This document shows, piece after piece, positions 1 to 46,041 of a stretch of 64,000 nt of DNA. The notes beneath the pieces were generated by a model, which did no database searches, had not been told where the DNA came from, and saw only the letters and a list, made by a program, of their open reading frames with translations. A program made the translations under genes and the position numbers. This stretch comes from Schmidtea nova (Eukaryota): the NCBI GenBank assembly GCA_044892505.1, contig CM097883.1:122202001-122266000 (forward strand), given 5' to 3'. Numbering within the stretch: position 1 is the stretch's first letter; each line of letters begins with the position of its first letter.

Positions 1-447
1 AAATCAATAATGTTTTAATGAGACAATTTTCAGTTTTTGTAATATCACATTGCGAAAATATCTGTCTCAAGAAATCAAATCTCTTTGAATCTTCTCTGGC
101 ATTCTCTGATTTTCATCGGGATATCATTCCGGCTTTGCGATTTCAAGTTGAGAATAGTATCAAAATTGAAGTTCTCGCAGCTGCATTTTCTTAGCATTTA
201 ATAATCAATCAGCAGAAATATTGAATTCTCTGATTTACAGGACAGTTGAATACAATATGATCTCGATGCTAGATATTATTTCAAATGCTTTTTTTCTAAA
301 TTAAAAATAGAGCAATTCTCTGAATAAAGATTAGGATAATAAACTTTAATGACTTTCAAGGTAGTCAAGAAATGACTAACGGAAAAATGAATTACACAAA
401 ACAGAAAAATAATGATAATGCTCCCAATTTCGCAATAGAAATAATTT

Positions 448-3400
448 TTATGTGGTTGGAAGAAAACCAGTAGCATGAAAATGCCATGATTTGGCAGAGT
501 GCGAGATGTTACTAAGCGCACATGCTTTCAATAGATCGGGTATTTTCGAAATCTTTACACCCATTCTTTCAAGAACATCATTAGTTGCTGGTGGAACAGA
601 TCCTAAAGAACCAATTATACAAGTGTACAAGTCGACTGTAAAGTTTGGTTTAGCTGATTTGATTTTCAATTTTAGAGATTCATATTTTTCTATATTTCTT
701 TTATTGACATCATCAAAATTTGCTATTGTGTCAAAGGGACACTTTACGTCAACCATGAGAATTGTCTTTTTGTCATTGTTGGTAATAATTAAATCAACTC
801 GTTCTTTAGAGTCGCGAACTAACGAACATGCATGGTCCACTACAACAATCAATTTAGGGTCTTTTAAATGTTGAGTAATCTGTTCGAGACAGTCGTTGTG
901 ACGCGAAAGTGCAAGAATTTGATGAACTTTACAATTTTGTAGGACATGTAACAAAGTTTCTTCATCTTTATGACAACGTCGACAAATCCTCTCATCAGGT
1001 TTTCTATATGGTTTTGCGAAATTAGCTAGAGTGTTTGTTCTGGCACGATGGATGAATTTCCAAGAACCTTCACGCAATTTCCCTCTAAATATCGCTTTGT
1101 TTATGTCGGGAGATAAGCTATATGCTGATGAGCCACTTATGTTACTATTTTTCCATTTAGTAAAATAAGAGTCATAGAGAGCAAGGTGCAGAATCTTTGA
1201 GATGGCTTTTCGGTTTAAGCACTTCAATATAATTGTGCCATTTGTAATTGTTGTGAGACGAATGATGGGTTCGTTTTCCAACACTTCAAACGATATTGTT
1301 ATTTTGTGTGTCTTTTCAAAATGTTGAATTGCTGTGCGTGGTCGGTAAAATCGGGTTTTCTTTCCCGAATGTTGTTTAATCATGTTGGCTCCATTAATCC
1401 AACTGAAGCTTTCTTGTAGCGATGGGTTGTTAATTCCAAGTCGAGGCCCAGTTACAAACTTTAGGGAATCTATATTTATCTTTTTTGCCAAAGGACAGAT
1501 TGAAGTAAAAAGTCTAAAGAAATGACTGATGGTTTGTGTGTGATATTCGTCGAGTAGATCAATACAAGAAGCACCTCCATTTTCAATAGAGTTGTAAAAG
1601 TAGCTGATTTCAGAATGATCAGACAAATTCATCATTTTTCTTAAATACTTCCTAAGCTTTGTTGTACTATTACCGATATTAGCAGAAAGAGCCCTAATTT
1701 TAATTTCTCTTGTTCTAAATGGGAAAATTAGACGAGAGTGTATGAAAATCTTGTAAGCTTTCAGCTTTTGCCAGCCGTACAAGTCTGAGTCGGCAAGTTT
1801 CTTGGTATCACTAACCACCTTATCAAGGATGTCATAAGGACTTTGGTCAGGGTCTTCACCAATTGGTACTCCAAGATATTCATAAAATTCTTTATTTAAT
1901 AATTTCTTAATGATTGTATTATCGACAGTTATCTCACTTGTTGTATTGACACTTGGAAGTTGAATATATGCACATTTTTCTGGTCGATACTCAAAGCCTA
2001 TTTCAGATGCAGTGTCGTGTGCAATGTTTATTATCATTTGCAAGTCCTTAGCATTATTAGCAATAAGAGCAATATCGTCAGCATATGCAAGAACTTGAAT
2101 TGAAGATTCACCAAGTTTAAAAGGATTGACACTTGAAAGACTAACAGCTTGAAGAACAGGATTGATTGCTATTGCAAACAAGACCATTGAAAGAGGACAT
2201 CCTTGTTTAACTCCTTGTTTTATTGCAATGTTTGGTGTTACAATCGGACCACAGGTATAGAAGGAGCTTGTTTCAGTGTACAAAAGTTTCAAAATCTTAG
2301 TAAATTTCTCACTCATTCCAATATGACGCAAAATCGCCCACATGTAATCATGGGGTACACTACCAAAAGCGTCCTTAATGTCAAGAAATGCAATAGCAAC
2401 AGGTGTATTTTTACTGTATTTCGAGTGTTCAAGACAAGATGAAAGTATGGAATTGTGTTCAACACATCCATCATGAATAGAACCTCCTTTTTGTCCAACA
2501 TGAAGAACATTATTTAGATTCACCCACAGTGTCAAACGTCTAGCTAATATTGATGAGAATAATTTGTAAACAACAGATAACAAAGCAATTGGACGCCAAG
2601 AAGAGATTAAAGTGTATTTATCACCCTTGTCGTGTTTAGGAATCATTAACGTTTTGAAGGATTTCCAAACGTCTGGAATTGTATTTTCCCTAATGATTTT
2701 ATTAAATAAAAAGGTCAACAATTTACCCTCTGGATCAAGAATTGCAATGTCTTTATATTGAATTCCATCAAGCCCAGGAGAAGTATTATCAGCGTTTTTC
2801 AACTCATAGAGTACCTCTTTTTCACTGATAAAATTCAGATTTAGAATATTTAAAGATTTAATTGCAAATTTAAAAACTTTGTCATGATTCTTTAAAATAG
2901 GATCTCGATGACTAAAATTATCTATGTGATCTTTAATTGTTGGTCTATCCTTTATGTCGTCACTCATAAATATTTTATTTATTGTCTTTTTCATATTTTT
3001 ATTAAAAGATGACGCCAAGTTAGTATTAGATGGTTTGTCTTTATTTGTTTTGTTTCCTAAATATGGCCTACGTAATTTAGTTAAATTGACTTCTTCTTTA
3101 CTTTTGGCAATAGTAGTAATAATAAATTCCGTTATTTCGTTAACATTTGAATTTTGTAGATTTAACAAATGCTCATTTATCAAAGTTATACGTTGATTTA
3201 TTTTAAGTTTAACATGTTGCTTTTCAATTTGTAAAGGCGTTAATGGAATTTCCATACATTCTTTTACAGGTGGTAGGAGAGAATTTACAACATTACCAAT
3301 GTCATGCAAATTAATGTTTTCAAGAGACAAGTCTAGAGCGTAGTTCTTGATGAAAGCACAGGTGAGAACCCTGCTTACAAGACCAGAACCTCGAACATCA

Positions 3401-5010
3401 TGTGGACAATTACCAGTTTTGCTACAAAGACCAGGAGATTCTCGTATTTCATTGACTTTAGTTATTAAAGCTTTAGCAGTAGATAGGTAAGGAGCATTAT
3501 TCTCTAAAGTTGTTGGGTTTAATAAATAATGTTCATTATTGTTGTAGTCAATGACAAGCAGGATTTGTTGAGCTTGTGGTGGAGCAATAATTGAAAAAAC
3601 AACTTGTGCTTTAGTTAGACGATCAATATTTAAAAAATCATTCAAATATTGAGTGCAGTCATCTAATATTGCAGTGCAAATGGTATTGTTTAAAAATATG
3701 AACCTTTCACACAGATTTAAATTATTAAAATAATTTGTTAAAATATTATTCGTAATTTTAAAATTTAAAAAGTTTAGATTTAACGCCACTTGATCAAGTA
3801 TTTTGGAATGAATAGTGTCGAGCTTTTCAATTACTCTATCTCTATTGCAAATAGATCCTGAAATATATTGCTCCAAAAACATTATGAAAGTCGTGGCATG
3901 TTCTATTGGATCATCAGAAAACATTGAAGTTCGAAAAAGAGTATGACGATGTTGTTGAAATTTTATTGAATTTTCTAAGATAAATTTATTTAAATAATCT
4001 GTCATATTTTCTCCAATTCCCAGCAGTCTTTCAGTTATATTCGTAGAACGAACATCAAAAATATAACTGCAGCCAAGACTAATAGAACAAAGAAAGAGAC
4101 ACCAATAGTTATCATTTGGAACAATACTGATAATAATGCGAATATCCTTAAATTGTTTAAAAGTAACATTGTCTCTTATATAAATATTATTTTGATTAAT
4201 CAAATTAATTGTTAGTTCAGGAGAAAACACAAGCACACTTGGATCATTTTGAAACCACTTATTTAAGAGTGTAGAAACACAAGCTTTCTCGTTGTTAAGT
4301 TTTATTGGTTTAACAATGTTGTTATTTTGGTGAATATTCTTTTTAAGCGCCATTGCTTTATTTAAATTAATTTTATTAAGAAAATGATTCTTTGGCAATC
4401 CACCACCCGATAATTTGACATTGTGATTTGATTGACCTTTTTTAAAATCGTGGATCTGTTTTCTAATGTTCAAGATAAAATCATCAGGTAAACATTCCCA
4501 TTCTCCACTAACAATCATTGCGTATGCACAAATAAAAGGTCCACAATCAAAATCATTATTTTGATATTTGAGATTTTTAATTGGATTGTCAGTTATTTGG
4601 TTGTGACGTTTGAATTTATTATTTAATACTGAGTTTATTTTTAGAGCATTAACTTTGCTGTCTAATCTATTCCTATAATTAAAGATTGGATCAATAAAAT
4701 AAGAAGTCAAAGAAGTCTTGCAATAAACAAACAAGACCCAATGGCAATTATTAATATTGAGAGGACACAATATTACTTGGGATTCAAAAATTGTTTGAGG
4801 TATCGGAAAAATATCATCGGTCATATTTGAGCATAAAATACTTACAACAAAACATTTAATGAAAGCAAAACTAGGGTTGCTGATGTGACTTTCAAAGAAA
4901 TAGTCAATGTCATCATCAGTGAACCAACATTTTAAATCATGAGTGTCAAGAGTGCATTCTGCATCAGTCTCGTCAGACAATGCAGTACATGTAGAGGCTG
5001 ATGCAGGCAC
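448..5010 (-). CDS. ORF2: Ulp1/C48-like cysteine protease (plus two degenerate repeats), reverse transcriptase, CCHC zinc knuckle, restriction-like endonuclease
   Basis: WFTDDDI...CHW(H90)...IDP(D107)...YQNNDFDCG(C156); RT motifs SPGLDG, WRPIALL, FLDIKDAFGSV, GVKQGCPLS, YADD (2074-2085), YLG; CRRCHKDEETLLHVLQNC (931-984); RHND; VDLII...VDVKCPF...KY. The track start is GTG; the first ATG is codon 63. Confidence 0.95.
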   Translation of the reverse strand: MPASASTCTALSDETDAECTLDTHDLKCWFTDDDIDYFFESHISNPSFAFIKCFVVSILCSNMTDDIFPIPQTIFESQVILCPLNINNCHWVLFVYCKTSLTSYFIDPIFNYRNRLDSKVNALKINSVLNNKFKRHNQITDNPIKNLKYQNNDFDCGPFICAYAMIVSGEWECLPDDFILNIRKQIHDFKKGQSNHNVKLSGGGLPKNHFLNKINLNKAMALKKNIHQNNNIVKPIKLNNEKACVSTLLNKWFQNDPSVLVFSPELTINLINQNNIYIRDNVTFKQFKDIRIIISIVPNDNYWCLFLCSISLGCSYIFDVRSTNITERLLGIGENMTDYLNKFILENSIKFQQHRHTLFRTSMFSDDPIEHATTFIMFLEQYISGSICNRDRVIEKLDTIHSKILDQVALNLNFLNFKITNNILTNYFNNLNLCERFIFLNNTICTAILDDCTQYLNDFLNIDRLTKAQVVFSIIAPPQAQQILLVIDYNNNEHYLLNPTTLENNAPYLSTAKALITKVNEIRESPGLCSKTGNCPHDVRGSGLVSRVLTCAFIKNYALDLSLENINLHDIGNVVNSLLPPVKECMEIPLTPLQIEKQHVKLKINQRITLINEHLLNLQNSNVNEITEFIITTIAKSKEEVNLTKLRRPYLGNKTNKDKPSNTNLASSFNKNMKKTINKIFMSDDIKDRPTIKDHIDNFSHRDPILKNHDKVFKFAIKSLNILNLNFISEKEVLYELKNADNTSPGLDGIQYKDIAILDPEGKLLTFLFNKIIRENTIPDVWKSFKTLMIPKHDKGDKYTLISSWRPIALLSVVYKLFSSILARRLTLWVNLNNVLHVGQKGGSIHDGCVEHNSILSSCLEHSKYSKNTPVAIAFLDIKDAFGSVPHDYMWAILRHIGMSEKFTKILKLLYTETSSFYTCGPIVTPNIAIKQGVKQGCPLSMVLFAIAINPVLQAVSLSSVNPFKLGESSIQVLAYADDIALIANNAKDLQMIINIAHDTASEIGFEYRPEKCAYIQLPSVNTTSEITVDNTIIKKLLNKEFYEYLGVPIGEDPDQSPYDILDKVVSDTKKLADSDLYGWQKLKAYKIFIHSRLIFPFRTREIKIRALSANIGNSTTKLRKYLRKMMNLSDHSEISYFYNSIENGGASCIDLLDEYHTQTISHFFRLFTSICPLAKKINIDSLKFVTGPRLGINNPSLQESFSWINGANMIKQHSGKKTRFYRPRTAIQHFEKTHKITISFEVLENEPIIRLTTITNGTIILKCLNRKAISKILHLALYDSYFTKWKNSNISGSSAYSLSPDINKAIFRGKLREGSWKFIHRARTNTLANFAKPYRKPDERICRRCHKDEETLLHVLQNCKVHQILALSRHNDCLEQITQHLKDPKLIVVVDHACSLVRDSKERVDLIITNNDKKTILMVDVKCPFDTIANFDDVNKRNIEKYESLKLKIKSAKPNFTVDLYTCIIGSLGSVPPATNDVLERMGVKISKIPDLLKACALSNISHSAKSWHFHATGFLPTT

Positions 5011-5019
5011 ATCCCATCA
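4952..5019 (-). promoter_or_regulatory. Putative UGA readthrough signal: in-frame UGA followed 6 nt later by a stem-loop
   Basis: RNA GUGC-CUGCAUCAG...CUGAUGCAG-AAU-GCAC (9-bp perfect stem, 4959-4967 with 4998-5006, plus 4 bp beyond a 3-nt bulge); function is inferred. Confidence 0.5.
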
Positions 5020-7437
5020 TTTGGTGATCGCCTTTGATAGTTTATGGTCTTTTCTAGTAGTCATTTTTCTAATGTCTGTATTTTTAGGTGGTAAACAAGA
5101 TGTAGATTGCGCATCAATATCAGTTTCTAAGAGAGCCGATTTAATGATACCTGTATTATTTGAATCTACGACATTGGAGCTAACGCTAACATCTTTACAA
5201 GTGTCTTTAGAAATTTCAATAACATCAACAGATTCACTACTAGTCAGAAGATTTTCAAGAGAGTCAACAAGATCAAAGATAACTGAAGTCATTTCAGCAT
5301 TACAAATTTTACGACATTTAATTGGAACCTGAAAATAATCTATGTTCTTATTCAAAAATCTTTTCTTGTCTCTTATTATAAAGTATATCAGTCGTTTAGC
5401 CTTGATTATGTTAATGTCATCACACTCAGAACGGAATTCATTTATGTGTGAAAAGACAGAGTCTATTGCATTCATTTGGTTACTTTTTTGGGGAAACAAG
5501 TTATTAATTAATTTTAAAAATTTATTAATTCTTTTAATTGTATCTTGTGAAATTATATTTTTTAATTTATCAATCTCACAGGTCAGCATCCATTGTTTGA
5601 ATTTTATAAGTTTTTCCTGACAACTAATTCTAAAGTATGAAGACGAAGGTATTTTATCAACAAATTCAGAGCCCCACACTTCAAAAGAGTCAATAGTCAA
5701 GGAATCGCATTTAACACAGTCTATAACTGAATGAATAAGTAAGGAATTACGGAAATAATTGACAACGTAATTATCATAATTTATATTTCTTGAATATTTA
5801 ATATTACCTTTTAAGTTTAAATAATTAAGGTAATAAATTAATTCCACAATCTTAATAGGAGAAACGGGTAATGATAAAAGTTTATCTAAATGCTTATCAG
5901 TTCTAGACATTTCATGCAAATCAAATAACCCAATATTAAACATTATATCAGAGGCATTGCTAGAATCAGCTTCTTTCATCGCAGATTTACAATCAACAGT
6001 AAATTTACCATCTATAAATGAAATGTTCTTTGGAAAATCCTTATTTAATTTTAAACTATTAATTAAATTAATTAATTTATCAGGATTCTTTGAAATATTT
6101 TCAATAAAAATCATTTCTTTTAGTTCAGGGTAATCGAGATAGAGTTTATTTATTTGTGATCTTGTAAGATTATTTGAAATTAATTCAAAACCAGCATTAT
6201 GACAATTATCAGAAGTGGAAAAGTCTTTCATTATAAAGTCACCGTCAACATACCTTATTTCTGATTTAACAAGAAAGTCTGGCAATTGTTTTTGCAATTT
6301 TAACAAATCTAAGGCTTTATTAATAACGCTTCCTTTTTGAATTTCATTTTTAATAGAGACAGTTTCTGCCAATTTGCTTGAGAGAGCAAATAAAAATTTT
6401 TTTATTTCTAAAGGTGCAGGAATGAGGTTAGATGTAAAATTATCGGTAGCAATAATATCCGAAATAAATGTTTTTTTCTTATTTAGAATATTAAGGTTTT
6501 GAGGAAGTTGATTAGAGTTAGCCATTTTATTACTATTTAATTTAATCGAAGCACAAAAATTATTGTTTCGATAAAATATATGATCAAAATCCTCAACAAA
6601 CTTAAAATTTGAATTATTTATTAAAGAAAGTTCATAATTTATACGATCATATTTATTTACGGATTTCTTTAATTTTAATAGTTCTTTTAAACGTGGAAAA
6701 TTATTAATTAAATTGGTACGCTCATTTTTAGTTAAAATCCGGGGTAAAAAATCAAATTTAAATTCATCAATTTTAACATTTCTTTTCCCCTTATTTAGTG
6801 AAATTTTAACAGATTTTTTAATTGAAGTTTTACTAAAACTATCATCAGAAACTAGGTCTAAATTTTGACCGTCTGCTTCAGCGTAAGATTTATCAGAAGG
6901 TTTTGGTATATCATTTATATCATTAGAATTATTATTTAATTTTATATTACTATTTAATTTAGAAATATGATTATTTTTATTATTATTAAAATTATGAAAA
7001 TTAGGAGCATTATCAAAATTATTAACGTTTAAAGAATTCAAGATTCCAACAATCAAATCAAGTTTACCCTGAAAATCAACAAAGTTCTTCTCCAGAGCAA
7101 CCATTCGTTTGAAAAGTCCGTCATCAGAAGTTGGAGGAAAAGAAATTCCATCTGTTTTTTCAGGCAAAACATCCATTTTAGATTGTGTCTTGGGTAAATA
7201 ATTTGCCTGAAAAGCATTGAAATTTCTCTCAGGAATCTCCACTCGTCGGCCAGGTTCATCTTTAAGCATAGAGATTTCTTCTGATCTTTTCTTTAAAATA
7301 TCCATAAGAGATTGAGAAGATTGAATTTGTCTTCTCAGAAAATCAACGATTAGCATATTTTCATTTAGATTTGACTGATTACACAATAAATCATCAGAGT
7401 GACTCTGATTGGCCGATTGCATAATACTAGTGTGCAT
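5017..7437 (-). CDS. ORF1, 806 aa, function unknown (N-terminal coiled-coil-like and Asn-rich segments); in frame with ORF2
   Basis: ATG 32 nt from the element 5' end; open in copies 1-4; ends AAA TGA TGG GAT GTG in the ORF2 frame. Confidence 0.85.
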   Translation of the reverse strand: MHTSIMQSANQSHSDDLLCNQSNLNENMLIVDFLRRQIQSSQSLMDILKKRSEEISMLKDEPGRRVEIPERNFNAFQANYLPKTQSKMDVLPEKTDGISFPPTSDDGLFKRMVALEKNFVDFQGKLDLIVGILNSLNVNNFDNAPNFHNFNNNKNNHISKLNSNIKLNNNSNDINDIPKPSDKSYAEADGQNLDLVSDDSFSKTSIKKSVKISLNKGKRNVKIDEFKFDFLPRILTKNERTNLINNFPRLKELLKLKKSVNKYDRINYELSLINNSNFKFVEDFDHIFYRNNNFCASIKLNSNKMANSNQLPQNLNILNKKKTFISDIIATDNFTSNLIPAPLEIKKFLFALSSKLAETVSIKNEIQKGSVINKALDLLKLQKQLPDFLVKSEIRYVDGDFIMKDFSTSDNCHNAGFELISNNLTRSQINKLYLDYPELKEMIFIENISKNPDKLINLINSLKLNKDFPKNISFIDGKFTVDCKSAMKEADSSNASDIMFNIGLFDLHEMSRTDKHLDKLLSLPVSPIKIVELIYYLNYLNLKGNIKYSRNINYDNYVVNYFRNSLLIHSVIDCVKCDSLTIDSFEVWGSEFVDKIPSSSYFRISCQEKLIKFKQWMLTCEIDKLKNIISQDTIKRINKFLKLINNLFPQKSNQMNAIDSVFSHINEFRSECDDINIIKAKRLIYFIIRDKKRFLNKNIDYFQVPIKCRKICNAEMTSVIFDLVDSLENLLTSSESVDVIEISKDTCKDVSVSSNVVDSNNTGIIKSALLETDIDAQSTSCLPPKNTDIRKMTTRKDHKLSKAITK

Positions 7438-7469
7438 GTATGAGTAGGATTATTTTCTTTTTTCAACGA

Positions 7470-7508
7470 TTTACTAGACCAGTGCTCTAACCACTGAGCT
7501 ACGAAGGC
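7470..7508 (-). pseudogene. 5' half (nt 1-39) of interrupted tRNA-Thr(AGT); 7470-7478 is the 9-bp target duplication
   Basis: Identical to the corresponding part of the array tRNA and joined directly to the element 5' end. Confidence 0.93.
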
Positions 7509-7684
7509 TTGAAATTTGAGAGATTTGGATATAAATCTCTAAATTGGCATTCTGTACCGAAAAAATCAAAATCCAACCGATACACAAGTGTCGGACAATC
7601 AATAGGATTATTGTGTATAAATTTTTCTAATACGAGAAAGAAAAACGGACAAGATTAATGTTGATGTCATAAAATTTATTTAGG

Positions 7685-7690
7685 AAAAAA
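7685..7690 (-). terminator. Pol III terminator T6, repeated in every unit
   Basis: TTTTTT 2 nt after the discriminator base on the minus strand. Confidence 0.85.
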
Positions 7691-7692
7691 GT

Positions 7693-7765
7693 TGCCTTCG
7701 GTGAGAATTGAACTCACGACCCCTGGTTTACTAGACCAGTGCTCTAACCACTGAGCTACGAAGGC
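7693..7765 (-). tRNA. TRNAT-AGU: tRNA-Thr(AGT), first full-length copy, representative of the array
   Basis: GCCTTCG TA GCTC AGTGGTTA GAGC A CTGGT CTAGTAA ACCAG GGGTC GTGAG TTCAATT CTCAC CGAAGGC A folds as a 73-nt cloverleaf; A box TAGCTCAGTGG, B box GTTCAATTC. Confidence 0.97.
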
Positions 7766-14885: not shown

Positions 14886-14958
14886 TGCCTTCAGTGAGAA
14901 TTGAACTCACGACCCCTGGTTTACTAGTCCATTGCTCTAACCACTGAGCTACGAAGGC
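14886..14958 (-). tRNA. TRNAT-AGU: Variant tRNA-Thr(AGT) (C27A, T31A, C66T by sequential count); same allele at 15143-15215 and 17713-17785
   Basis: + strand ttcagtgag and actagtccattg instead of ttcggtgag and actagaccagtg; two anticodon-stem pairs are broken, so it may be non-functional. Confidence 0.75.
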
Positions 14959-15399: not shown

Positions 15400-15472
15400 T
15401 GCCTTCAGTGAGAATTGAACTCACGACCCCTGGTTTACTAGTCCAGTGCTCTAACCACTGAGCTACGAAGGC
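15400..15472 (-). tRNA. TRNAT-AGU: Variant tRNA-Thr(AGT) (T31A, C66T); same allele at 17970-18042
   Basis: + strand ttcagtgag and actagtccagtg. Confidence 0.75.
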
Positions 15473-26435: not shown

Positions 26436-26441
26436 ATCCCA

Positions 26442-28862: not shown

Positions 28863-28894
28863 GATTGAGTAGAATTATTTTCCTTTTTCAACGA

Positions 28895-34203: not shown

Positions 34204-34209
34204 ATCCCA

Positions 34210-37409: not shown

Positions 37410-40400
37410 TTATGTGGTTGGAAGAAAACCAGTAGCATGAAAATGCCATGTTTTGGCAGAGTGCGAGATGTTACTAAGCGCACATGCTTTCAATAGATCG
37501 GGTATTTTCGAAATCTTTACACCCATTTTTTCAAGAACATCATTAGTTGCTGGTGGAACAGATCCTAAAGAACCAATTATACAAGTGTACAAGTCAACTG
37601 TAAAGTTTGGTTTAGCTGATTTGATTTTCAATTTTAGAGATTCATATTTTTCTATATTTCTTTTATTGACATCATCAAAATTTGCTATTGTGTCAAAGGG
37701 ACACTTTACGTCAACCATGAGAATTGTCTTTTTGTCATTGTTGGTAATAATTAAATCAACTCGTTCTTTAGAGTCGCGAACTAACGAACATGCATGGTCC
37801 ACTACAACAATCAATTTAGGGTCTTTTAAATGTTGAGTAATCTGTTCGAGACAGTCGTTGTGACGCGAAAGTGCAAGAATTTGATGAACTTTACAATTTT
37901 GTAGGACATGTAACAAAGTTTCTTCATCTTTATGACAACGTCGACAAATCCTCTCATCAGGTTTTCTATATGGTTTTGCGAAATTAGCTAGAGTATTTGT
38001 TCTTGCACGATGGATGAATTTCCAAGAACCTTCACGCAATTTCCCTCTAAATATCGCTTTGTTTATGTCGGGAGATAAGCTATATGCTGATGACCCACTT
38101 ATGTTACTATTTTTCCATTTAGTAAAATAAGAGTCATAGAGAGCAAGGTGCAAAATCTTTGAGATGGCTTTTCGGTTTAAGCACTTCAATATAATTGTGC
38201 CATTTGTAATTGTTGTGAGACGAATGATGGGTTCGTTTTCCAACACTTCAAACGATATTGTTATTTTGTGTGTCTTTTCAAAATATTGAATTGCTGTGCG
38301 TGGTCGGTAAAATCGGGTTTTCTTTCCCGAATGTTGTTTAATCATGTTGGCTCCATTAATCCAACTGAAGCTTTCTTGTAGCGATGGGTTGTTAATTCCA
38401 AGTCGAGGCCCAGTTACAAACTTTAGTGAATCTATATTTATCTTTTTTGCCAAGGGACAGATTGAAGTAAAAAGTCTAAAGAAATGACTGATGGTTTGTG
38501 TGTGATATTCGTCGAGTAGATCAATACAAGAAGCACCTCCATTTTCAATAGAGTTGTAAAAGTAGCTGATTTCAGAATGATCAGACAAATTCATCATTTT
38601 TCTTAAATACTTCCTAAGCTTTGTTGTACTATTACCGATATTAGCAGAAAGAGCACTAATTTTAATTTCTCTTGTTCTAAATGGGAAAATTAGACGAGAG
38701 TGTATGAAAATCTTGTAAGCTTTCAGCTTTTGCCAGCCGTACAAGTCTGAGTCGGCAAGTTTCTTGGTATCACTAACCACCTTATCAAGGATGTCATAAG
38801 GACTTTGGTCAGGGTCTTCACCTATTGGTACTCCAAGATATTCATAAAATTCTTTATTTAATAATTTCTTAATGATTGTATTGTCGACAGTTATCTCACT
38901 TGTTGTATTGACACTTGGAAGTTGAATAAATGCACATTTTTCTGGTCGATACTCAAAGCCTATTTCAGATGCAGTGTCATGTGCAATGTTTATTATCATT
39001 TGCAAGTCCTTAGCATTATTAGCAATAAGAGCAATATCGTCAGCATATGCAAGAACTTGGATTGAAGATTCACCAAGTTTAAAAGGATTGACACTTGAAA
39101 GACTAACAGCTTGAAGAACAGGATTGATTGCTATTGCAAACAAGACCATTGAAAGAGGATATCCTTGTTTAACTCCTTGTTTTATTGCAATGTTTGGTGT
39201 TACAATCGGACCACAGGTATAGAAGGAGCTAGTTTCAGTGTACAAAAGTTTCAAAATCTTAGTAAATTTCTCACTCATTCCAATATGACGCAAAATCGCC
39301 CACATGTAATCATGAGGTACACTACCAAAAGCGTCCTTAATGTCAAGAAATGCAATAGCAACAGGTGTATTTTTACTGTATTTCGAGTGTTCAAGACAAG
39401 ATGAAAGTATGGAATTGTGTTCAACACATCCATCATGAATAGAACCTCCTTTTTGTCCAACATGAAGAACATTATTTAGATTCACCCACAGTGTCAAACG
39501 TCTAGCTAAAATTGATGAGAATAATTTGTAAACAACAGATAACAAAGCAATTGGACGCCAAGATGAGATTAAAGTGTATTTATCACCCTTGTCGTGTTTA
39601 GGAATCATTAACGTTTTGAAGGTTTTCCAAACGTCTGGAATTGTATTTTCCCTAATGATTTTATTAAATAAAAAGGTCAACAATTTACCCTCTGGATCAA
39701 GAATTGCAATGTCTTTATATTGAATTCCATCAAGCCCAGGAGAAGTATTATCAGCGTTTTTCAACTCATAGAGTACCTCTTTTTCACTGATCAAATTCAG
39801 ATTTAGAGTATTTAAAGATTTAATTGCAAATTTAAAAACTTTGTCATGATTCTTTAAAATAGGATCTCGATGACTAAAATTATCTATGTGATCTTTAATT
39901 GTTGGTCTATCCTTTATGTCGTCACTCATAAATATTTTATTTATTGTCTTTTTCATATTTTTATTAAAAGATGACGCCAAGTTAGTATTAGATGGTTTGT
40001 CTTTATTTGTTTTGTTTCCTAAATATGGCCTACGTAATTTAGTTAAATTGACTTCTTCTTTACTTTTGGCAATAGTAGTAATAATAAATTCCGTTATTTC
40101 GTTAACATTTGAATTTTGTAGATTTAACAAATGCTCATTTATCAAAGTTATACGTTGATTTATTTTAAGTTTAACATGTTGCTTTTCAATTTGTAAAGGC
40201 GTTAATGGAATTTCCATACATTCTTTTACAGGTGGTAGGAGAGAATTTACAACATTACCAATGTCATGCAAATTAATGTTTTCAAGAGACAAGTCTAGAG
40301 CGTAGTTCTTGATGAAAGCACAGGTGAGAACCCTGCTTACAAGACCAGAACCTCGAACATCATGTGGACAATTACCAGTTTTGCTACAAAGACCAGGAGA

Positions 40401-41972
40401 TTCTCGTATTTCATTGACTTTAGTTATTAAAGCTTTAGCAGTAGATAGGTAAGGAGCATTATTCTCTAAAGTTGTTGGGTTTAATAAATAATGTTCATTA
40501 TTGTTGTAGTCAATGACAAGCAGGATTTGTTGAGCTTGTGGTGGAGCAATAATTGAAAAAACAACTTGTGCTTTAGTTAGACGATCAATATTTAAAAAAT
40601 CATTCAAATATTGAGTGCAGTCATCTAATATTGCAGTGCAAATGGTATTGTTTAAAAATATGAAACTTTCACACAGATTTAAATTATTAAAATAATTTGT
40701 TAAAATATTATTCGTAATTTTAAAATTTAAAAAGTTTAGATTTAATGCCACTTGACCAAGTATTTTGGAATGAATAGTGTCGAGCTTTTCAATTACTCTA
40801 TCTCTATTGCAAATAGATCCTGAAATATATTGCTCCAAAAACATTATGAAAGTCGTGGCATGTTCTATTGGATCATCAGAAAACATTGAAGTTCGAAAAA
40901 GAGTATGACGATGTTATTGAAATTTTATTGAATTTTCTAAGATAAATTTATTTAAATAATCTGTCATATTTTCTCCAATTCCCAGCAGTCTTTCAGTTAT
41001 ATTCGTAGAGCGAACGTCAAAAATATAACTGCAGCCAAGACTAATTGAACAAAGAAAGAGACACCAATAGTTATCATTTGGAACAATACTGATAATAATG
41101 CGAATATCCTTAAATTGTTTAAAAGTAACATTGTCTCTTATATAAATATTATTTTGATTAATCAAATTAATTGTTAGTTCAGGAGAAAACACAAGCACAC
41201 TTGGATCATTTTGAAACCACTTATTTAAGAGTGTAGAAACACAAGCTTTCTCGTTGTTAAGTTTTATTGGTTTAACAATGTTGTTATTTTGGTGAATATT
41301 CTTTTTAAGCGCCATTGCTTTATTTAAATTAATTTTATTAAGAAAATGATTCTTTGGCAATCCACCACCCGATAATTTGACATTGTGATTTGATTGACCT
41401 TTTTTAAAATCGTGGATCTGTTTTCTAATGTTCAAGATAAAATCATCAGGTAAACATTCCCATTCTCCACTAACAATCATTGCGTATGCACAAATAAAAG
41501 GTCCACAATCAAAATCATTATTTTGATATTTGAGATTTTTAATTGGATTGTCAGTTATTTGGTTGTGACGTTTGAATTTATTATTTAATACTGAGTTTAT
41601 TTTTAGAGCATTAACTTTGCTGTCTAATCTATTCCTATAATTAAAGATTGGATCAATAAAATAAGACGTCAAAGAAGTCTTGCAATAAACAAACAAGACC
41701 CAATGGCAATTATTAATATTGAGAGGACACAATATTACTTGGGATTCAAAAATTGTTTGAGGTATCGGAAAAATATCATCGGTCATATTTGAGCATAAAA
41801 TACTTACAACAAAACATTTAATGAAAGCAAAACTAGGGTTGCTGATGTGACTTTCAAAGAAATAGTCAATGTCATCATCAGTGAACCAACATTTTAAATC
41901 ATGAATGTCAAGAGTGCATTCTGCATCAGTCTCGTCAGACAATGCAGTACATGTAGAGGCTGATGCAGGCAC
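37410..41972 (-). pseudogene. ORF2 of copy 4, split by Q353*
   Basis: 352 and 1158 aa track ORFs. Confidence 0.9.
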
Positions 41973-41978
41973 ATCCCA

Positions 41979-44399
41979 TCATTTGGTGATCGCCTTTGAT
42001 AGTTTATGGTCTTTTCTAGTAGTCATTTTTCTAATGTCTGTATTTTTAGGTGGTAAACAAGATGTAGACTGCGCATCAATATCAGTTTCTAAGAGAGCCG
42101 ATTTAATGATACCTGTATTATTTGAATCTGCGACATTGGAGCTAACGCTAACATCTTTACAAGTGTCTTTAGAAATTTCAATAACATCAACAGATTCACT
42201 ACTAGTCAGAAGATTTTCAAGAGAGTCAACAAGATCAAAGATAACTGAAGTCATTTCAGCATTACAAATTTTACGACATTTAATCGGAACATGAAAATAA
42301 TCTATGTTCTTATTCAAAAATCTTTTCTTGTCTCTTATTATAAAGTATATCAGTCGTTTAGCCTTGATTATGTTAATGTCATCACACTCAGAACGGAATT
42401 CATTTATGTGTGAAAAGACAGAGTCTATTGCATTCAGTTGGTTACTTTTTTGGGGAAACAAGTTATTAATTAATTTTAAAAATTTATTAATTCTTTTAAT
42501 TGTATCTTGTGAAATTATATTTTTTAATTTATCAATCTCACAGGTCAGCATCCATTGTTTGAATTTTATAAGTTTTTCCTGACAACTAATTCTAAAGTAT
42601 GAAGACGAAGGTATTTTATCAACAAATTCAGAGCCCCACACTTCAAAAGAGTCAATAGTCAAGGAATCGCATTTAACACAGTCTATAACTGAATGAATAA
42701 GTAAGGAATTACGGAAATAATTGACAACATAATTATCATAATTTATATTTCTTGAATATTTAATATTACTTTTTAAGTTTAAATAATTAAGATAGTAAAT
42801 TAATTCCACAATCTTAATAGGAGAAGCGGGTAATGATAAAAGTTGATCTAAATGCTTATCAGTTCTACACATTTCATGCAAATCAAATAACCCAATATTA
42901 AACATTATATCAGAGGCATTGCTAGAATCAGCTTCTTTCATCGCAGATTTACAATCAACAGTAAATTTACCATCTATAAATGAAATGTTCTTTGGAAAAT
43001 CCTTATTTAATTTTAAACTATTAATTAAATTAATTAATTTATCAGGATTTTTTGAAATATTTTCAATAAAAATCATTTCTTTTAGTTCAGGGTAATCGAG
43101 ATAGAGTTTATTTATTTGTGATCTTGTAAGATTATTTGAAATTAATTCAAAACCAGCATTATGACAATTATCAGAAGTGGAAAAGTCTTTCATTATAAAG
43201 TCACCGTCAACATACCTTATTTCTGATTTAACAAGAAAGTCTGGCAATTGTTTTTGCAATTTTAACAAATCTAAGGCTTTATTAATAACGCTTCCCTTTT
43301 GAATTTCATTTTTAATAGAGACAGTTTCTGCCAATTTGCTTGAGAGAGCAAATAAAAATTTTTTTATTTCTAAAGGTGCAGGAATGAGGTTAGATGTAAA
43401 ATTATCGGTAGAAATAATATCCGAAATAAATGTTTTTTTCTTATTTAAAATATTAAGGTTTTGAGGAAGTTGATTAGAGTTAGCCATTTTATTACTATTT
43501 AATTTAATCGAAGCACAAAAATTATTGTTTCGATAAAATATGTGATCAAAATCCTCAACAAACTTAAAATTTGAATTATTTATTAAAGAAAGTTCATAAT
43601 TTATACGATCATATTTATTTACGGATTTCTTTAATTTTAATAGTTCTTTTAAACGTGGAAAATTATTAATTAAATTGGTACGCTCATTTTTAGTTAAAAT
43701 CCGGGGTAAAAAATCAAATTTAAATTCATCAATTTTAACATTTCTTTTCCCCTTATTTAGTGAAATTTTAACAGATTTTTTAATTAAAGTTTTACTAAAA
43801 CTATCATCAGAAACTAGGTCTAAATTTTGACCGTCTGCTTCAGCGTAAGATTTATCAGAAGGTTTTGGTATATCATTTATATCATTAGAATTATTATTTA
43901 ATTTTATATTACTATTTAATTTAGAAATATGATTATTTTTATTATTATTAAAATTATGAAAATTAGGAGCATTATCAAAATTATTAACGTTTAAAGAATT
44001 CAAGATTCCAACAATCAAATCAAGTTTACCCTGAAAATCAACAAAGTTCTTCTCCAGAGCAACCATTCGTTTGAAAAGTCCGTCATCAGAAGTTGGAGGA
44101 AAAGAAATTCCATCTGATTTTTCAGGCAAAACATCCATTTTAGATTGTGTCTTGGGTAAATAATTTGCCTGAAAAGCATTGAAATTTCTCTCAAGAATCT
44201 CCACTCGTCTGCCAGGTTCATCTTTAAGCATAGAGATTTTTTCTGATCTTTTCTTTAAAATATCCATAAGACATTGAGAAGATTGAATTTGTCTTCTCAG
44301 AAAATCAACGATTAGCATATTTTCATTTAGATTTGACTGATTACACAATAAATCATCAGGGTGACTCTGATTGGCCGATTGCATAATTCCAGTGTGCAT
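41979..44399 (-). CDS. ORF1 of copy 4 (806 aa)
   Basis: Same protein as copy 3 ORF1 in the track. Confidence 0.8.
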   Translation of the reverse strand: MHTGIMQSANQSHPDDLLCNQSNLNENMLIVDFLRRQIQSSQCLMDILKKRSEKISMLKDEPGRRVEILERNFNAFQANYLPKTQSKMDVLPEKSDGISFPPTSDDGLFKRMVALEKNFVDFQGKLDLIVGILNSLNVNNFDNAPNFHNFNNNKNNHISKLNSNIKLNNNSNDINDIPKPSDKSYAEADGQNLDLVSDDSFSKTLIKKSVKISLNKGKRNVKIDEFKFDFLPRILTKNERTNLINNFPRLKELLKLKKSVNKYDRINYELSLINNSNFKFVEDFDHIFYRNNNFCASIKLNSNKMANSNQLPQNLNILNKKKTFISDIISTDNFTSNLIPAPLEIKKFLFALSSKLAETVSIKNEIQKGSVINKALDLLKLQKQLPDFLVKSEIRYVDGDFIMKDFSTSDNCHNAGFELISNNLTRSQINKLYLDYPELKEMIFIENISKNPDKLINLINSLKLNKDFPKNISFIDGKFTVDCKSAMKEADSSNASDIMFNIGLFDLHEMCRTDKHLDQLLSLPASPIKIVELIYYLNYLNLKSNIKYSRNINYDNYVVNYFRNSLLIHSVIDCVKCDSLTIDSFEVWGSEFVDKIPSSSYFRISCQEKLIKFKQWMLTCEIDKLKNIISQDTIKRINKFLKLINNLFPQKSNQLNAIDSVFSHINEFRSECDDINIIKAKRLIYFIIRDKKRFLNKNIDYFHVPIKCRKICNAEMTSVIFDLVDSLENLLTSSESVDVIEISKDTCKDVSVSSNVADSNNTGIIKSALLETDIDAQSTSCLPPKNTDIRKMTTRKDHKLSKAITK

Positions 44400-44697
44400 G
44401 ATTGAGTAGAATTATTTTCCTTTTTCAACGATTTACTAGACCAGTGCTCTAACCACTGAGCTACGAAGGCTTGAAATTTGAGAGATTTGGATATAAATCT
44501 CTAAATTGGCATTCTGTACCGAAAAAATCAAAATCCAACCGATACACAAGTGTCGGACAATCAATAGGATTATTGTGTATAAATTTTTCTAATACGAGAA
44601 ACAAAAACGGACAAGATTAATGTTGATGTCATAAAATTTATTTAGGAAAAAAGTTGCCTTCGGTGAGAATTGAACTCACGACCCCTGGTTTACTAGA

Positions 44698-46041
44698 TTA
44701 AACATTTATTATGATAACAAATTTTAGATTGTACACAAATGAGTCGGTTCAACTTGGAACCTGCCATTCAAATCAATAATGTTTTAATGAGACAATTTTC
44801 AGTTTTTGTAATATCACATTGCGAAAATCACATTGCGAGATTAAAGTGTATTTATCACCCTTGTCGTGTTTAGGAATCATTAACGTTTTGAAGGATTTCC
44901 AAACGTCTGGAATTGTATTTTCCCTAATGATTTTATTAAATAAAAAGGTCAACAATTTACCCTCTGGATCAAGAATTGCAATGTCTTTATATTGAATTCC
45001 ATCAAGCCCAGGAGAAGTATTATCAGCGTTTTTCAACTCATAGAGTACCTCTTTTTCACTGATCAAATTCAGATTTAGAATATTTAAAGATTTAATTGCA
45101 AATTTAAAAACTTTGTCATGATTCTTTAAAATAGGATCTCGATGACTAAAATTATCTATGTGATCTTTAATTGTTGGTCTATCCTTTATGTCGTCACTCA
45201 TAAATATTTTATTTATTGTCTTTTTCATATTTTTATTAAAAGATGACGCCAAGTTAGTATTAGATGGTTTGTCTTTATTTGTTTTGTCTCCTAAATATGG
45301 CCTACGTAATTTAGTTAAATTGACTTCTTCTTTACTTTTGGCAATAGTAGTAATAATAAATTCCGTTATTTCGTTAACATTTGAATTTTGTAGATTTAAC
45401 AAATGCTCATTTATCAAAGTTATACGTTGATTTATTTTAAGTTTAACATGTTGTTTTTCAATTTGTAAAGGCGTTAATGGAATTTCCATACATTTTTTTA
45501 CAAGTGGTAGGAGAGAATTTATAACATTACCAATCTCATGCAAATTAATGTTTTCAAGAGACAAGTCTAGAGCGTAGTTCTTGATGAAAGCACAGATGAG
45601 AACCCTGCTTACAAGACCAGAACCTCGAACATCATGTGGACAATTACCAGTTTTGCTAGAAAGACCAGAAGATTCTCTTATTTCATTGATTTTAGTTATT
45701 AAAGCTTTAGCAGTAGATAAATAAGGAGCATTATTCTCTAAAGTTGTTTGGTTTAATAAATAATGTTCATTATTGTTGTAGTCGATGACAAGCAGGATTT
45801 GTTGAGCTTGTGGGGAGCAATAATTGAAAAAACAACTTGTGCTTTAGTTAGACGATCAATATTTAAAAAATCATTCAAATATTGAGTGCAGTCATCTAAT
45901 ATTGCAGTGCAAATTGTATTGTTTAAAAATATGAAATTTTCACACAAATTTAAATTATTAAAATAATTTGTTAAAATATTATTCGTAATTTTAAAATTTA
46001 AAAAGTTTAGATTTATTGCCACTTGACCAAGTATTTTGGAA
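44698..46041 (-). mobile_element. Retrotransposon copy 5, internally deleted (~2.5 kb) and 5'-truncated remnant
   Basis: Normal 3' junction after tttactaga (44689-44697); 3' UTR fused at ~44827-44838 to RT N-terminal sequence; homology stops at gtattttggaa (46041). Confidence 0.9.

What the first reader, a model, noticed from the sequence alone, without database searches (positions are those of the whole stretch)
1..46041. Site-specific RLE retrotransposon that targets the tRNA-Thr(AGT) anticodon loop in a tandem array
Seen: all 8 visible element/tRNA junctions (7470, 21353, 28895, 29160, 36663, 36928, 44432, 44697) fall at the same 9-bp site, with the element co-oriented with the tRNA. Known: RT+CCHC+RLE with an N-terminal Ulp1 protease is the architecture of NeSL-group elements (NeSL-1 targets C. 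elegans SL1 genes), and RLE elements typically parasitise multicopy RNA genes. I recall tRNA-array-targeting RLE families being catalogued in planarians but cannot verify this. The tRNA-Thr target and this two-ORF layout may be undescribed. Copy 1 is coding-intact, so it is a candidate for a sequence-specific insertion tool.
Basis: partly seen in the sequence, partly recalled or inferred. Interest (0 to 1): 0.9.

Follow-up and report, generated by a model that had tools for sequence, protein, structure and literature searches.

The report
Retrotransposon aimed at tRNA-Thr anticodon loop
A 7.5-kb jumping gene of the R2/NeSL kind sits at exactly the same spot, the anticodon loop, in several copies of a tandemly repeated threonine-tRNA gene. 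This habit is already described for related flatworm elements, but this one seems to make its enzyme by reading through a stop codon, which I did not find described.

Summary
There are 53 intact tRNA-Thr(AGT) genes in a 257-bp tandem array. Four full-length element copies (about 7.5 kb) and one fragment are co-oriented with the tRNA. All 8 visible junctions lie at one site, with a duplication of up to 9 bp covering tRNA positions 31-39.

The 8 junctions are not 8 events. Copies 2-4 share one ORF2 stop and identical 265-bp spacers, so they look like DNA-level duplicates. Copy 1 differs from copy 2 mostly by synonymous changes (dN/dS 0.26), and copy 5 is older and truncated. I count about three independent hits.

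ORF2 carries Ulp1, RT, CCHC and a restriction-like endonuclease, and matches solved R2 proteins. A relative at 41% identity sits in a tRNA-Val gene. Kojima and Jurka (2015) already list tRNA-Arg and tRNA-Glu specific planarian LIN elements and a tRNA-Pro specific NeSL-1_TV. This is therefore a new member of a known kind.

Three points are new in this report:
- ORF1 and ORF2 share one frame, split by a single UGA followed by a covarying hairpin. This holds in all 12 elements compared and suggests programmed readthrough.
- ORF2 starts with three tandem Ulp1-like domains, of which only the first is catalytic.
- No zinc finger or Myb domain was found upstream of the RT.

The parts
7471..21353 (-). 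Tandem array of tRNA-Thr(AGT) genes with a 257-bp unit. It holds 53 intact genes plus the half-genes next to copies 1 and 2.
1..7470 (-). Element copy 1. Its 5' end is at 7470 (or 7469, because one A is ambiguous). About the last 72 nt of its 3' UTR lie beyond the window start. Both ORFs are intact.
7438..7470 (-). Copy 1 5' UTR, only 33 nt. It differs from copy 2 at 4 of 33 positions.
5017..7437 (-). Copy 1 ORF1, 806 codons, ending in the TGA at 5017-5019. It has no Pfam, PDB-sequence or PDB-fold match. It is 31% identical to the ORF1 of relatives L001 and L002.
4952..5019 (-). In-frame UGA plus downstream hairpin. Core arms are 4998-5006 and 4959-4967; outer arms are 5007-5010 and 4952-4955. 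This is the candidate readthrough signal. The stretch is identical in c1-c4.
448..5016 (-). Copy 1 ORF2, in frame with ORF1 and intact. There is no in-frame AUG in the first 64 codons after the UGA.
4426..4938 (-). ORF2 Ulp1-like domain A (aa 25-195). H90, D107, Q150 and C156 are invariant in 13 of 13 sequences. It is followed by the invariant G202-G203 in a disordered linker.
3271..4293 (-). ORF2 Ulp1-like domains B (aa 240-420) and C (aa 421-580). Both lack the catalytic Cys. Domain C has Ser at that position in 12 of 13 sequences.
1570..2832 (-). ORF2 reverse transcriptase with thumb (aa 727-1147). The ADD triplet of the active-site box is invariant.
556..990 (-). ORF2 CCHC zinc knuckle (C1343, C1346, H1355, C1360) and restriction-like endonuclease (R1404, D1406, D1421, K1423). 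All are invariant in 13 of 13 sequences.
21354..28895 (-). Element copy 2, full length (7542 bp). ORF1 (26442-28862) is intact. ORF2 (21873-26441) is broken by one in-frame stop.
29161..36663 (-). Element copy 3. ORF1 (34210-36630) is intact. ORF2 (29642-34209) is broken twice: the stop shared with c2 and c4, plus one single-base frameshift. It shares a 3' UTR deletion with c4.
36929..44432 (-). Element copy 4. ORF1 (41979-44399) is intact. ORF2 (37410-41978) is broken by the one shared in-frame stop. It differs from c3 by 2 substitutions and 1 indel.
44698..46044 (-). Element copy 5, a fragment. It is 5'-truncated, with one large internal deletion and two single-base indels, and is about 98% identical to the other copies. 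Its 3' junction is at the same tRNA site. Its 5' side abuts non-tRNA DNA, which is the end of the array.
28896..29160 (-). Interstitial 265-bp tRNA unit between c2 and c3. Identical units lie at 36664-36928 and 44433-44697. Each holds the 3' part of a tRNA, a spacer, and the 5' part of a tRNA.

Best explanation
This is a sequence-specific non-LTR retrotransposon of the restriction-like-endonuclease (R2/NeSL) type. Its target is the tRNA-Thr(AGT) gene.

Shown:
- Every visible junction lies at tRNA positions 31-39, with a duplication of up to 9 bp and the same orientation as the tRNA.
- ORF2 has an active-looking Ulp1 protease, two degenerate Ulp1-like domains, an RT, a CCHC knuckle and an RLE whose key residues are invariant among relatives.
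- ORF1 and ORF2 share one frame and are split by a single UGA followed by a covarying hairpin.

Inferred:
- The endonuclease nicks the antisense strand between positions 30 and 31, and that 3'-OH primes reverse transcription of the element RNA (target-primed reverse transcription).
- The sense strand is cut about 9 nt downstream, between positions 39 and 40, which gives the duplication.
- Most ribosomes stop at the UGA and make ORF1 protein. A fraction read through and make an ORF1-ORF2 polyprotein, in the manner of gag-pol.
- The Ulp1 domain cuts this polyprotein, possibly at the invariant L/I-x-G-G in the linker after the protease.
- Transcription is by Pol II rather than Pol III. T4 runs begin 129 nt into the element, and an AATAAA hexamer lies 8-13 nt before the 3' end.
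- After insertion, unequal crossing-over in the array copied a dead element (c2 to c3 and c4), as happens with R2 in rDNA.
For: Junctions and target duplication.

Domains: Pfam RVT_1 7.6e-28 and Peptidase_C48 4.9e-8. R2 protein structures 9nl2, 9nl3, 9dou and 8gh6 match both the RT and the CCHC+RLE region. Catalytic residues are invariant in 13 of 13 sequences.

Independent events:
- c1 against c2 has 24.5 synonymous and 24.5 non-synonymous differences. dN/dS is 0.26 overall and 0.15 in ORF2, with p = 7e-6, and still 0.0017 if 30% of neutral changes were synonymous.
- The differences are unevenly spread: 5' UTR 4 of 33, ORF1 27 of 2421, ORF2 23 of 4569, 3' UTR 0 of 447.
- c5 is about 2% diverged and truncated differently.

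The family targets tRNA genes:
- Relative L003 (41% identity) ends in the D-loop of a tRNA-Val(AAC) gene, followed by intact tRNA-Val genes.
- Planarian LIN15_SM (tRNA-Arg), LIN25_SM (tRNA-Glu) and NeSL-1_TV (tRNA-Pro) are published (PMC4640811). The LIN15_SM and LIN25_SM 3' termini resemble ours.

Readthrough:
- In 12 of 12 elements ORF1 and ORF2 are in frame with exactly one stop. That stop is always TGA, while the ORF2 stops are TAA in 7 and TGA in 5.
- 11 of 12 have no AUG in the first 50 codons after the stop.
- RNAalifold predicts a 9-bp helix. In the 13-pair structure counted (that helix plus a 4-bp outer helix), 89% of cells are paired, against 16-37% when partners are slid. 6 pairs change on both sides, and 0 of 500 shuffles reach the covariation score.

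Ulp1 triplication.

DNA-level duplication of c2-c4: shared stop, identical spacers, adjacent units.
Against: - Only one locus of one genome is visible, so genome-wide specificity is not shown.
- The 5' junctions of c1 and c2-c4 are identical. That fits precise joining but also common descent.
- c2 against c3 and c4 also gives dN/dS of 0.2-0.3 on 11-13 differences, which is unexpected for dead duplicates. Gene conversion or chance could explain it.
- Readthrough is inferred from sequence only, and the hairpin arms also encode conserved residues. In the window the hairpin's folding z-score is only -1.9.
- No RT phylogeny with NeSL, R5, LIN or Utopia could be built, so clade placement rests on architecture, target type and 3'-end likeness.
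- No DNA-binding domain was identified, so how the target is recognised is unknown.
Confidence: 0.8

Rival explanations
1. There was one chance insertion into the array, and unequal crossing-over then spread it. The element has no real preference for the tRNA-Thr site.
For: c2-c4 do look like DNA-level duplicates: they share an ORF2 stop, have identical 265-bp spacers and sit in adjacent units. The 5' junction is identical in c1 and c2-c4. Only one locus is visible.
Against: The differences between c1 and c2 are biased towards synonymous sites (dN/dS 0.26, p 7e-6) and are unevenly spread. Neutral decay of one insertion would not give that. c5 is 2% diverged and truncated differently. Relatives and published planarian LIN families also sit inside tRNA genes.
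Confidence: 0.05
2. ORF2 is not made by UGA readthrough. It could be made by termination-reinitiation, by non-AUG or internal initiation, or from a separate RNA. The conserved hairpin would then serve another role, such as binding the element's own protein.
For: No translation data exist. The hairpin arms overlap conserved codons, and the window's fold z-score is modest. Other non-LTR elements use coupling or reinitiation between ORFs (my own knowledge of L1 and SART1, not checked here).
Against: The same frame and exactly one stop occur in 12 of 12 elements, down to 26% ORF2 identity. The stop is always UGA and is followed by C in 9 of 12. Amino-acid conservation starts right after the stop, and there is no AUG before the protease domain in most elements. 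The helix starts about 10 nt after the stop and shows compensatory changes.
Confidence: 0.15
3. The run of near-identical copies c2-c4 is an assembly artefact of a repetitive region. Fewer copies exist in the real chromosome.
For: c3 and c4 differ by 2 substitutions and 1 indel over 7.5 kb, and their spacers are identical. Tandem arrays are hard to assemble.
Against: c2, c3 and c4 each carry private differences, including a frameshift found only in c3 and a 3' UTR deletion absent from c2. A collapsed or duplicated consensus would not show that. The window has no N runs.
Confidence: 0.05

Closest known systems
Planarian LIN15_SM (tRNA-Arg) and LIN25_SM (tRNA-Glu), in the R5/LIN lineage of the NeSL clade (Kojima and Jurka 2015, PMC4640811)
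   Same: Both are RLE-type non-LTR elements inserted inside tRNA genes and co-oriented with them. Both lack an A-tail and have an AT-rich 3' terminus ending ...AATAAA-N-TTTTAA. The alignment score of our terminus to theirs exceeds all 500 shuffles. LIN15_SM also inserts just upstream of the anticodon stem. The window is AT-rich (68%), like planarian DNA.
   Different: The target here is tRNA-Thr(AGT), with the junction in the anticodon loop. I could not obtain the LIN protein sequences, so their identity to ours, their ORF layout and the presence of Ulp1 or a UGA are unknown. The source organism of the window is not known to me.
NeSL-1 of Caenorhabditis elegans and Utopia-1_TSP (NeSL clade)
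   Same: These have an Ulp1-like cysteine protease N-terminal to the RT, a C-terminal zinc knuckle plus RLE, and a multicopy small-RNA gene as target (PMC4640811).
   Different: Their targets are the spliced-leader or U2 snRNA genes. Utopia families carry 1-3 N-terminal zinc fingers, and none was found here. Three tandem Ulp1-like domains and a UGA-split frame are not mentioned in the text I read.
R2 elements (R2Bm, R2Tg and other solved R2 proteins)
   Same: These are the best solved-structure matches for both the RT (E 7.7e-42) and the CCHC+RLE region (E 1.8e-5). Both insert by target-primed reverse transcription into a tandem multicopy RNA gene, and their copies are reshuffled by unequal crossing-over.
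   Different: R2 has a single ORF with N-terminal zinc-finger and Myb DNA-binding domains and no protease. It targets 28S rDNA and is co-transcribed, then freed by a 5' ribozyme. No ribozyme family was found here at E up to 1, and the 5' UTR is only 33 nt.
Retroviral gag-pol stop-codon readthrough (for example the murine leukaemia virus type) and alphavirus-type UGA-C readthrough
   Same: An in-frame stop separates a structural ORF from the protease and polymerase ORF, and an RNA structure lies a few nucleotides downstream (my own knowledge of those systems; features here).
   Different: The element class is different (non-LTR). The structure here is a simple hairpin as far as tested, not a demonstrated pseudoknot. 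No translation data exist.

Membership tests
RLE-type (R2-group/NeSL-group) non-LTR retrotransposons | Reverse transcriptase of the non-LTR type | tested here: met
   Pfam RVT_1 at 7.6e-28. R2 protein structures match at E 7.7e-42 over aa 727-1147. The ADD triplet is invariant.
RLE-type (R2-group/NeSL-group) non-LTR retrotransposons | C-terminal CCHC zinc knuckle followed by a PD-(D/E)xK restriction-like endonuclease, with no N-terminal APE endonuclease | tested here: met
   aa 1341-1485 align to the R2 CCHC+RLE region (E 1.8e-5). C1343, C1346, H1355, C1360, R1404, D1406, D1421 and K1423 are invariant in 13 of 13 sequences. There is no Exo_endo_phos hit.
RLE-type (R2-group/NeSL-group) non-LTR retrotransposons | No LTRs, occasional 5' truncation, and target-site duplication or deletion at a fixed site | tested here: met
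   The termini are unique. c5 is 5'-truncated. The duplication is up to 9 bp.
NeSL clade (including NeSL-1, Utopia, R5/LIN) | RT phylogeny groups the element with NeSL, R5, LIN or Utopia rather than R2, R4, CRE or HERO | not testable with these tools
   No NeSL, R5, LIN or Utopia protein came back from any search, and Repbase is not available.
NeSL clade (including NeSL-1, Utopia, R5/LIN) | Ulp1-like cysteine protease upstream of the RT (in NeSL proper and Utopia-1_TSP) | tested here: met
   Pfam C48. Foldseek matches Ulp1, SENP and NEDP1 at probability 1.0. The catalytic H, D, Q and C are invariant.
NeSL clade (including NeSL-1, Utopia, R5/LIN) | N-terminal zinc finger(s) (general in Utopia) | tested here: not met
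   No zinc-finger Pfam hit and no CCHH or CCHC pattern outside aa 1343-1360.
tRNA-gene-specific members of the R5/LIN lineage | 3' junctions of independent copies fall at one position inside a tRNA gene | tested here: met
   Four 3' junctions and four 5' junctions lie at one site, representing about 3 independent events. A genome-wide census was not possible.
Programmed stop-codon readthrough signals | In-frame leaky stop, conserved across relatives, with a conserved downstream RNA structure and no independent start for the downstream ORF | tested here: met
Programmed stop-codon readthrough signals | A readthrough protein is actually made | not testable with these tools
   This needs ribosome profiling or proteomics of the source organism.

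The most novel reading that the evidence does not exclude
This lineage of tRNA-gene-specific RLE retrotransposons expresses its enzyme as an ORF1-ORF2 polyprotein by programmed UGA readthrough driven by a 3' hairpin. A built-in Ulp1 protease then processes the polyprotein. The element finds its tRNA target without the zinc-finger and Myb domains used by R2, perhaps through the two dead Ulp1-like domains or through the fold-orphan ORF1. That would be a retrovirus-like gag-pol expression strategy and a new target-recognition solution within non-LTR elements. I did not find either described in the literature I could search.
Probability: 0.45. Interest if true: 0.65.

Novelty: new member of a known kind. 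Interest (0 to 1): 0.5.

Why it matters
Site-specific RLE retrotransposons are the model for target-primed reverse transcription, so each new target and protein architecture shows how specificity is built.

This element is a clean natural example. It has exact junctions in the anticodon loop of a tandem tRNA gene and an uninterrupted copy next to decayed ones. About a dozen relatives at 26-49% ORF2 identity allow comparative inference.

The comparison shows three things that seem worth a specialist's attention:
- a conserved UGA plus hairpin between ORF1 and ORF2;
- a triplicated Ulp1 module with only one live active site;
- the absence of the usual N-terminal DNA-binding domains.

It also shows, within one window, how array recombination inflates the apparent number of insertions. 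That matters for anyone who counts junctions as evidence of specificity.

Tried and rejected
- **5' ribozyme.** I looked for an R2-style ribozyme or any other RNA family. Rfam at gathering score over 21-64 kb and at E up to 1 over 6700-7800 found only tRNA.
- **Pol III co-transcription from the tRNA A box.** Rejected as the route to full-length RNA, because T4 runs start at element position 129 and there are 82 in all.
- **ORF1 annotation.** Pfam, PDB sequences, the word-indexed protein search and Foldseek all gave nothing. Only the exhaustive HMMER search found 16 relatives.
- **Wider target survey.** The JGI metagenome scan returned 80 loci, but they are distant RT-only relatives (36% identity or less) and none of the 19 I scanned carries an intact tRNA. 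It was uninformative.
- **Short 3' flanks of L009 (15 nt) and L001 (10 nt).** Rfam could not confirm them as tRNA D-arms, so I leave them as 'D-arm-like, unverified'.
- **Direct BLASTP between the three Ulp1-like segments.** Not significant. Profile-profile comparison was needed.
- **RT phylogeny.** Not possible, because no reference NeSL, R5 or Utopia sequences are within reach.
- **Source organism.** Not determined, because the tools mask it. I call it 'planarian-like' only by analogy.
- **Selenocysteine or a variant genetic code as the meaning of the UGA.** Rejected, because the UGA is the only in-frame stop in about 2,330 codons and occurs once per element in all 12.


Full report
**1. Observation**

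The window has no N runs and is 68% A+T. ARAGORN finds 53 intact tRNA-Thr(AGT) genes on the - strand between 7693 and 21126. TRF reports a 257-bp unit, 54 copies, 99% matches, over 7470-21353.

I read the - strand at each junction:
- The four 5' junctions (7470, 28895, 36663, 44432) are all ...ggtctagtaa|atcgttgaaaaa.
- The four 3' junctions (21353, 29160, 36928, 44697) are all ...aaatgtttaa|tctagtaaacc.

The uninterrupted gene reads ...ggtctagtaaaccagg. The duplicated target is therefore TCTAGTAA plus an ambiguous ninth A. With the anticodon at positions 34-36, the duplication covers positions 31-39, which is the seven-base anticodon loop plus its closing pair. The element and the tRNA are co-oriented.

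**2. How many events**

Pairwise BLAST gives these identities:

| Pair | Identity | Notes |
|---|---|---|
| c1 vs c2 | 99.28% | 54 mismatches, no gaps |
| c2 vs c3 or c4 | 99.77% | |
| c3 vs c4 | 99.96% | |
| c5 vs all others | about 98% | |

The state of each copy is as follows:
- c1: ORF1 and ORF2 intact.
- c2 and c4: one in-frame stop each in ORF2.
- c3: the same stop plus one single-base frameshift.
- c1-c4: ORF1 intact.
- c5: a 5'-truncated fragment with one large internal deletion and two single-base indels.

c2-c4 share the same stop, lie in adjacent units, and are separated by three identical 265-bp units. I therefore read c2-c4 as one insertion multiplied by unequal crossing-over.

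c1 and c2 did not diverge as dead DNA:
- There are 24.5 synonymous against 24.5 non-synonymous differences over 1423 and 5558 sites. dN/dS is 0.26 overall and 0.15 in ORF2, with p = 7e-6. The p value is still 0.0017 if 30% of neutral changes were synonymous.
- The differences are unevenly spread: 5' UTR 4 of 33, ORF1 27 of 2421, ORF2 23 of 4569, 3' UTR 0 of 447.

That is the signature of two diverged active lineages, and so of separate insertions. Counting c5, the window supports about three independent hits at one nucleotide position.

A small unexplained point remains. c2 against c3 and c4 also gives dN/dS of 0.2-0.3, but on only 11-13 differences.

**3. The proteins**

ORF2 is 1520 codons as listed (1522 codons after the UGA). 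Its features are:
- Pfam Peptidase_C48 at aa 72-168 and RVT_1 at aa 790-1049.
- Against solved structures, the best hits are R2 proteins (9nl2, 9nl3, 9dou, 8gh6). They match over the RT (aa 727-1147, E 7.7e-42) and over the CCHC+RLE region (aa 1341-1485, E 1.8e-5).
- In an alignment with 12 relatives at 26-49% identity, the following are invariant: the protease H90, D107, Q150 and C156; the RT ADD triplet; the knuckle C1343, C1346, H1355 and C1360; and the nuclease R1404, D1406, D1421 and K1423.

An AlphaFold model of aa 1-760 has mean pLDDT 69, with the domains at 80-90. It shows three consecutive domains with the same strand and helix order. Foldseek matches it to Ulp1, SENP and NEDP1 at probability 1.0. 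Profile-profile comparison confirms the triplication:

| Comparison | Probability | E-value |
|---|---|---|
| Domain A vs C | 97.6% | 2.7e-12 |
| Domain B vs C | 94.9% | 4.5e-8 |
| Domain A vs B | 75% | 2.5e-5 |
| Domain A or B vs linker (control) | 0.1% | 0.5-0.6 |

Only domain A keeps the catalytic residues. Domain C has Ser in 12 of 13 sequences where the Cys should be.

After domain A lies a disordered linker. It contains G202-G203, invariant in 13 of 13 sequences, preceded by L or I at position 200 in 10 of 13. CE-clan proteases are known to cut at Gly-Gly (established knowledge), so I propose this as a cleavage site. That is an inference.

No zinc finger or Myb domain was found upstream of the RT.

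ORF1 (806 aa) has no Pfam or PDB match. It has only 16 relatives among 1.84 billion representative proteins and is 31% identical to the ORF1 of L001 and L002. Its model shows N-terminal helices, three small alpha/beta modules and a helical C-terminal domain (pLDDT 80-95 over most of aa 340-730). The model has no PDB fold match.

**4. One frame, one UGA**

In copy 1 and in all 11 relatives I fetched (L001-L011):
- ORF1 and ORF2 are in the same frame and separated by exactly one stop.
- That stop is always TGA and is followed by C in 9 of 12. The ORF2 stops are TAA in 7 and TGA in 5.
- In 11 of 12 there is no in-frame ATG within 50 codons after the stop. In several, the first ATG lies beyond the catalytic His.

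Starting about 10 nt after the stop, RNAalifold predicts a 9-bp helix. I counted pairs on a 13-pair structure made of that helix plus a 4-bp outer helix. In it, 89% of cells are paired, against 16-37% when the 3' partners are slid. Six pairs change on both sides; the pair at alignment columns 34 and 89 is UA in 6 sequences, CG in 5 and GC in 1. None of 500 shuffles reaches the covariation score.

In the window the hairpin folds at -26 kcal/mol with z = -1.9. It is identical in c1-c4.

I conclude that the 'two-ORF layout' is a candidate programmed UGA readthrough that would give an ORF1-ORF2 polyprotein. My library searches found no description of this for non-LTR elements, but the library is incomplete.

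**5. Relatives and their targets**

- L003 (41% identity) ends ...aaataaatttttcg|cggttatcacg... This continues as the exact 3' part of a tRNA-Val(AAC) gene from the D-loop onward. Rfam tRNA scores it at 22.7 bits (E 0.015). Intact tRNA-Val AAC, CAC and TAC genes follow in the same orientation.
- L001 and L009 end in 10 and 15 nt that look like tRNA D-arms. I could not confirm this with a tool.
- L004 has the 3' part of a metazoan SRP RNA gene about 200 nt upstream of its ORF1.
- Kojima and Jurka 2015 report NeSL-1_TV as tRNA-Pro specific and planarian LIN15_SM and LIN25_SM as tRNA-Arg and tRNA-Glu specific.
- Their S6 Fig shows LIN15_SM and LIN25_SM 3' termini very like ours. The alignment scores, 17 and 15, exceed all 500 shuffles.
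- An AATAAA hexamer lies 8-13 nt before the 3' end in the window. It is also visible in L001, L003, L009 and LIN25_SM.

**6. Mechanism**

This section is inference. It rests on the established R2 model of target-primed reverse transcription.
- The RLE nicks the antisense strand between positions 30 and 31.
- That 3'-OH primes cDNA synthesis at the 3' end of the element RNA.
- The sense strand is cut 8-9 nt downstream, and fill-in gives the duplication.
- Pol III cannot make the full RNA, because the first T4 run is at element position 129.
- No ribozyme family was found at the 33-nt 5' UTR.
- Pol II with the AATAAA signal is therefore the more likely route. It would also leave a few target nucleotides on the RNA 3' end to pair with the nicked target.

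How the protein recognises the site is unknown.

**7. Known or new**

The kind is known: NeSL-clade RLE elements specific for tRNA genes. The tRNA-Thr(AGT) anticodon-loop target is not among the targets named in the paper I read. I could not check Repbase or Dfam.

The UGA-hairpin signal, the triple Ulp1 module and the lack of N-terminal zinc fingers are shared by the whole set of relatives. They may be undescribed.

My verdict is a new member of a known kind, with interest 0.5.

**8. Surroundings**

Beyond c5 the array ends in non-tRNA DNA. The region 46-64 kb is transposon debris:
- pieces of a protein-primed DNA polymerase B gene on the - strand;
- an endonuclease-VII-like piece;
- a hAT dimerisation piece;
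- a BED finger;
- a 721-codon ORF with no family match, in a stretch richer in G+C (0.39-0.46 against about 0.22-0.36 elsewhere in this flank).

**9. Slips and limits**

- While judging the 15-nt flank of L009, I recalled tRNA-Leu and tRNA-Ser D-arm letters from memory in my reasoning. That breaks the rule against sequences from memory. I stopped, sent none of them to any tool, and rest no claim on them.
- The raw BLAST table shows alignment block ends that reveal where the deletions of c5 and of the c3/c4 3' UTR lie.
- I used the tool-printed consensus lines for nothing. All conservation figures come from per-column counts.

Noticed in passing
window 4952-5019 (-); also L001-L011 at their ORF1/ORF2 boundaries: A single in-frame TGA separates ORF1 from ORF2 in 12 of 12 elements, followed by a covarying 9-bp hairpin. 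The downstream ORF has no AUG of its own. This is a candidate programmed readthrough.
   Followed up: yes
window 3271-4938 (-), ORF2 aa 25-580: There are three tandem Ulp1-like domains. Only the first keeps His, Asp, Gln and Cys. The third has a conserved Ser (12 of 13 sequences) at the Cys position.
   Followed up: yes
window 4399-4413 (-), ORF2 aa 200-204: An invariant Gly-Gly (13 of 13) preceded by Leu or Ile (10 of 13) lies in a predicted disordered linker just after the live protease. It is a possible self-cleavage site.
   Followed up: partly
L004 1-115: The 5' flank of a relative (43% identity) is the 3' part of a metazoan SRP (7SL) RNA gene (60.5 bits, E 8e-15), ending about 200 nt before its ORF1. 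This may be another Pol III gene neighbourhood, or a coincidence.
   Followed up: no
L003 7043-8315: A relative is inserted in the D-loop of a tRNA-Val(AAC) gene. Intact tRNA-Val AAC, CAC and TAC genes follow at 250-450-bp spacing, so this is a mixed-isoacceptor cluster rather than a uniform array.
   Followed up: partly
window 21354-21366 and the matching 3' ends of c3-c5; L001, L003, L009: An AATAAA hexamer lies 8-13 nt before the A-tail-less 3' end. It is also present in relatives and in the published LIN25_SM terminus. This fits Pol II 3'-end formation in the downstream tRNA flank.
   Followed up: partly
window 46045-46400: The 5' side of the truncated copy 5 abuts non-tRNA DNA, so the tRNA array ends there. 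No tRNA 5' half lies beyond it.
   Followed up: partly
window c2 (21354-28895) against c3 and c4: The 11-13 coding differences between copies that share an inactivating stop are still enriched for synonymous changes (dN/dS 0.2-0.3, p 0.01-0.03). Gene conversion from live copies, trans-mobilisation or chance could explain it. It remains unexplained.
   Followed up: no
window 54065-55708 (-): Several short ORFs match different parts of a protein-primed DNA polymerase B (PF03175), and one matches endonuclease VII. This is a polymerase gene broken into at least three pieces, probably from a decayed large DNA transposon.
   Followed up: partly
window 56418-56720 (-) and 61118-61459 (-): A hAT C-terminal dimerisation fragment (E 1e-3) and a BED zinc finger (E 1.5e-9). 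These are further transposon debris.
   Followed up: no
window 58415-60580 (+): An uninterrupted 721-codon ORF has no Pfam match. It lies in a stretch with G+C of 0.39-0.46, against about 0.22-0.36 in the rest of this flank. Its origin is unknown.
   Followed up: partly
window 52408-52744 and 62100-62598: Short tandem repeats: a 136-bp unit in 2.5 copies at 82% matches, and a 248-bp unit in 2 copies at 96% matches.
   Followed up: no
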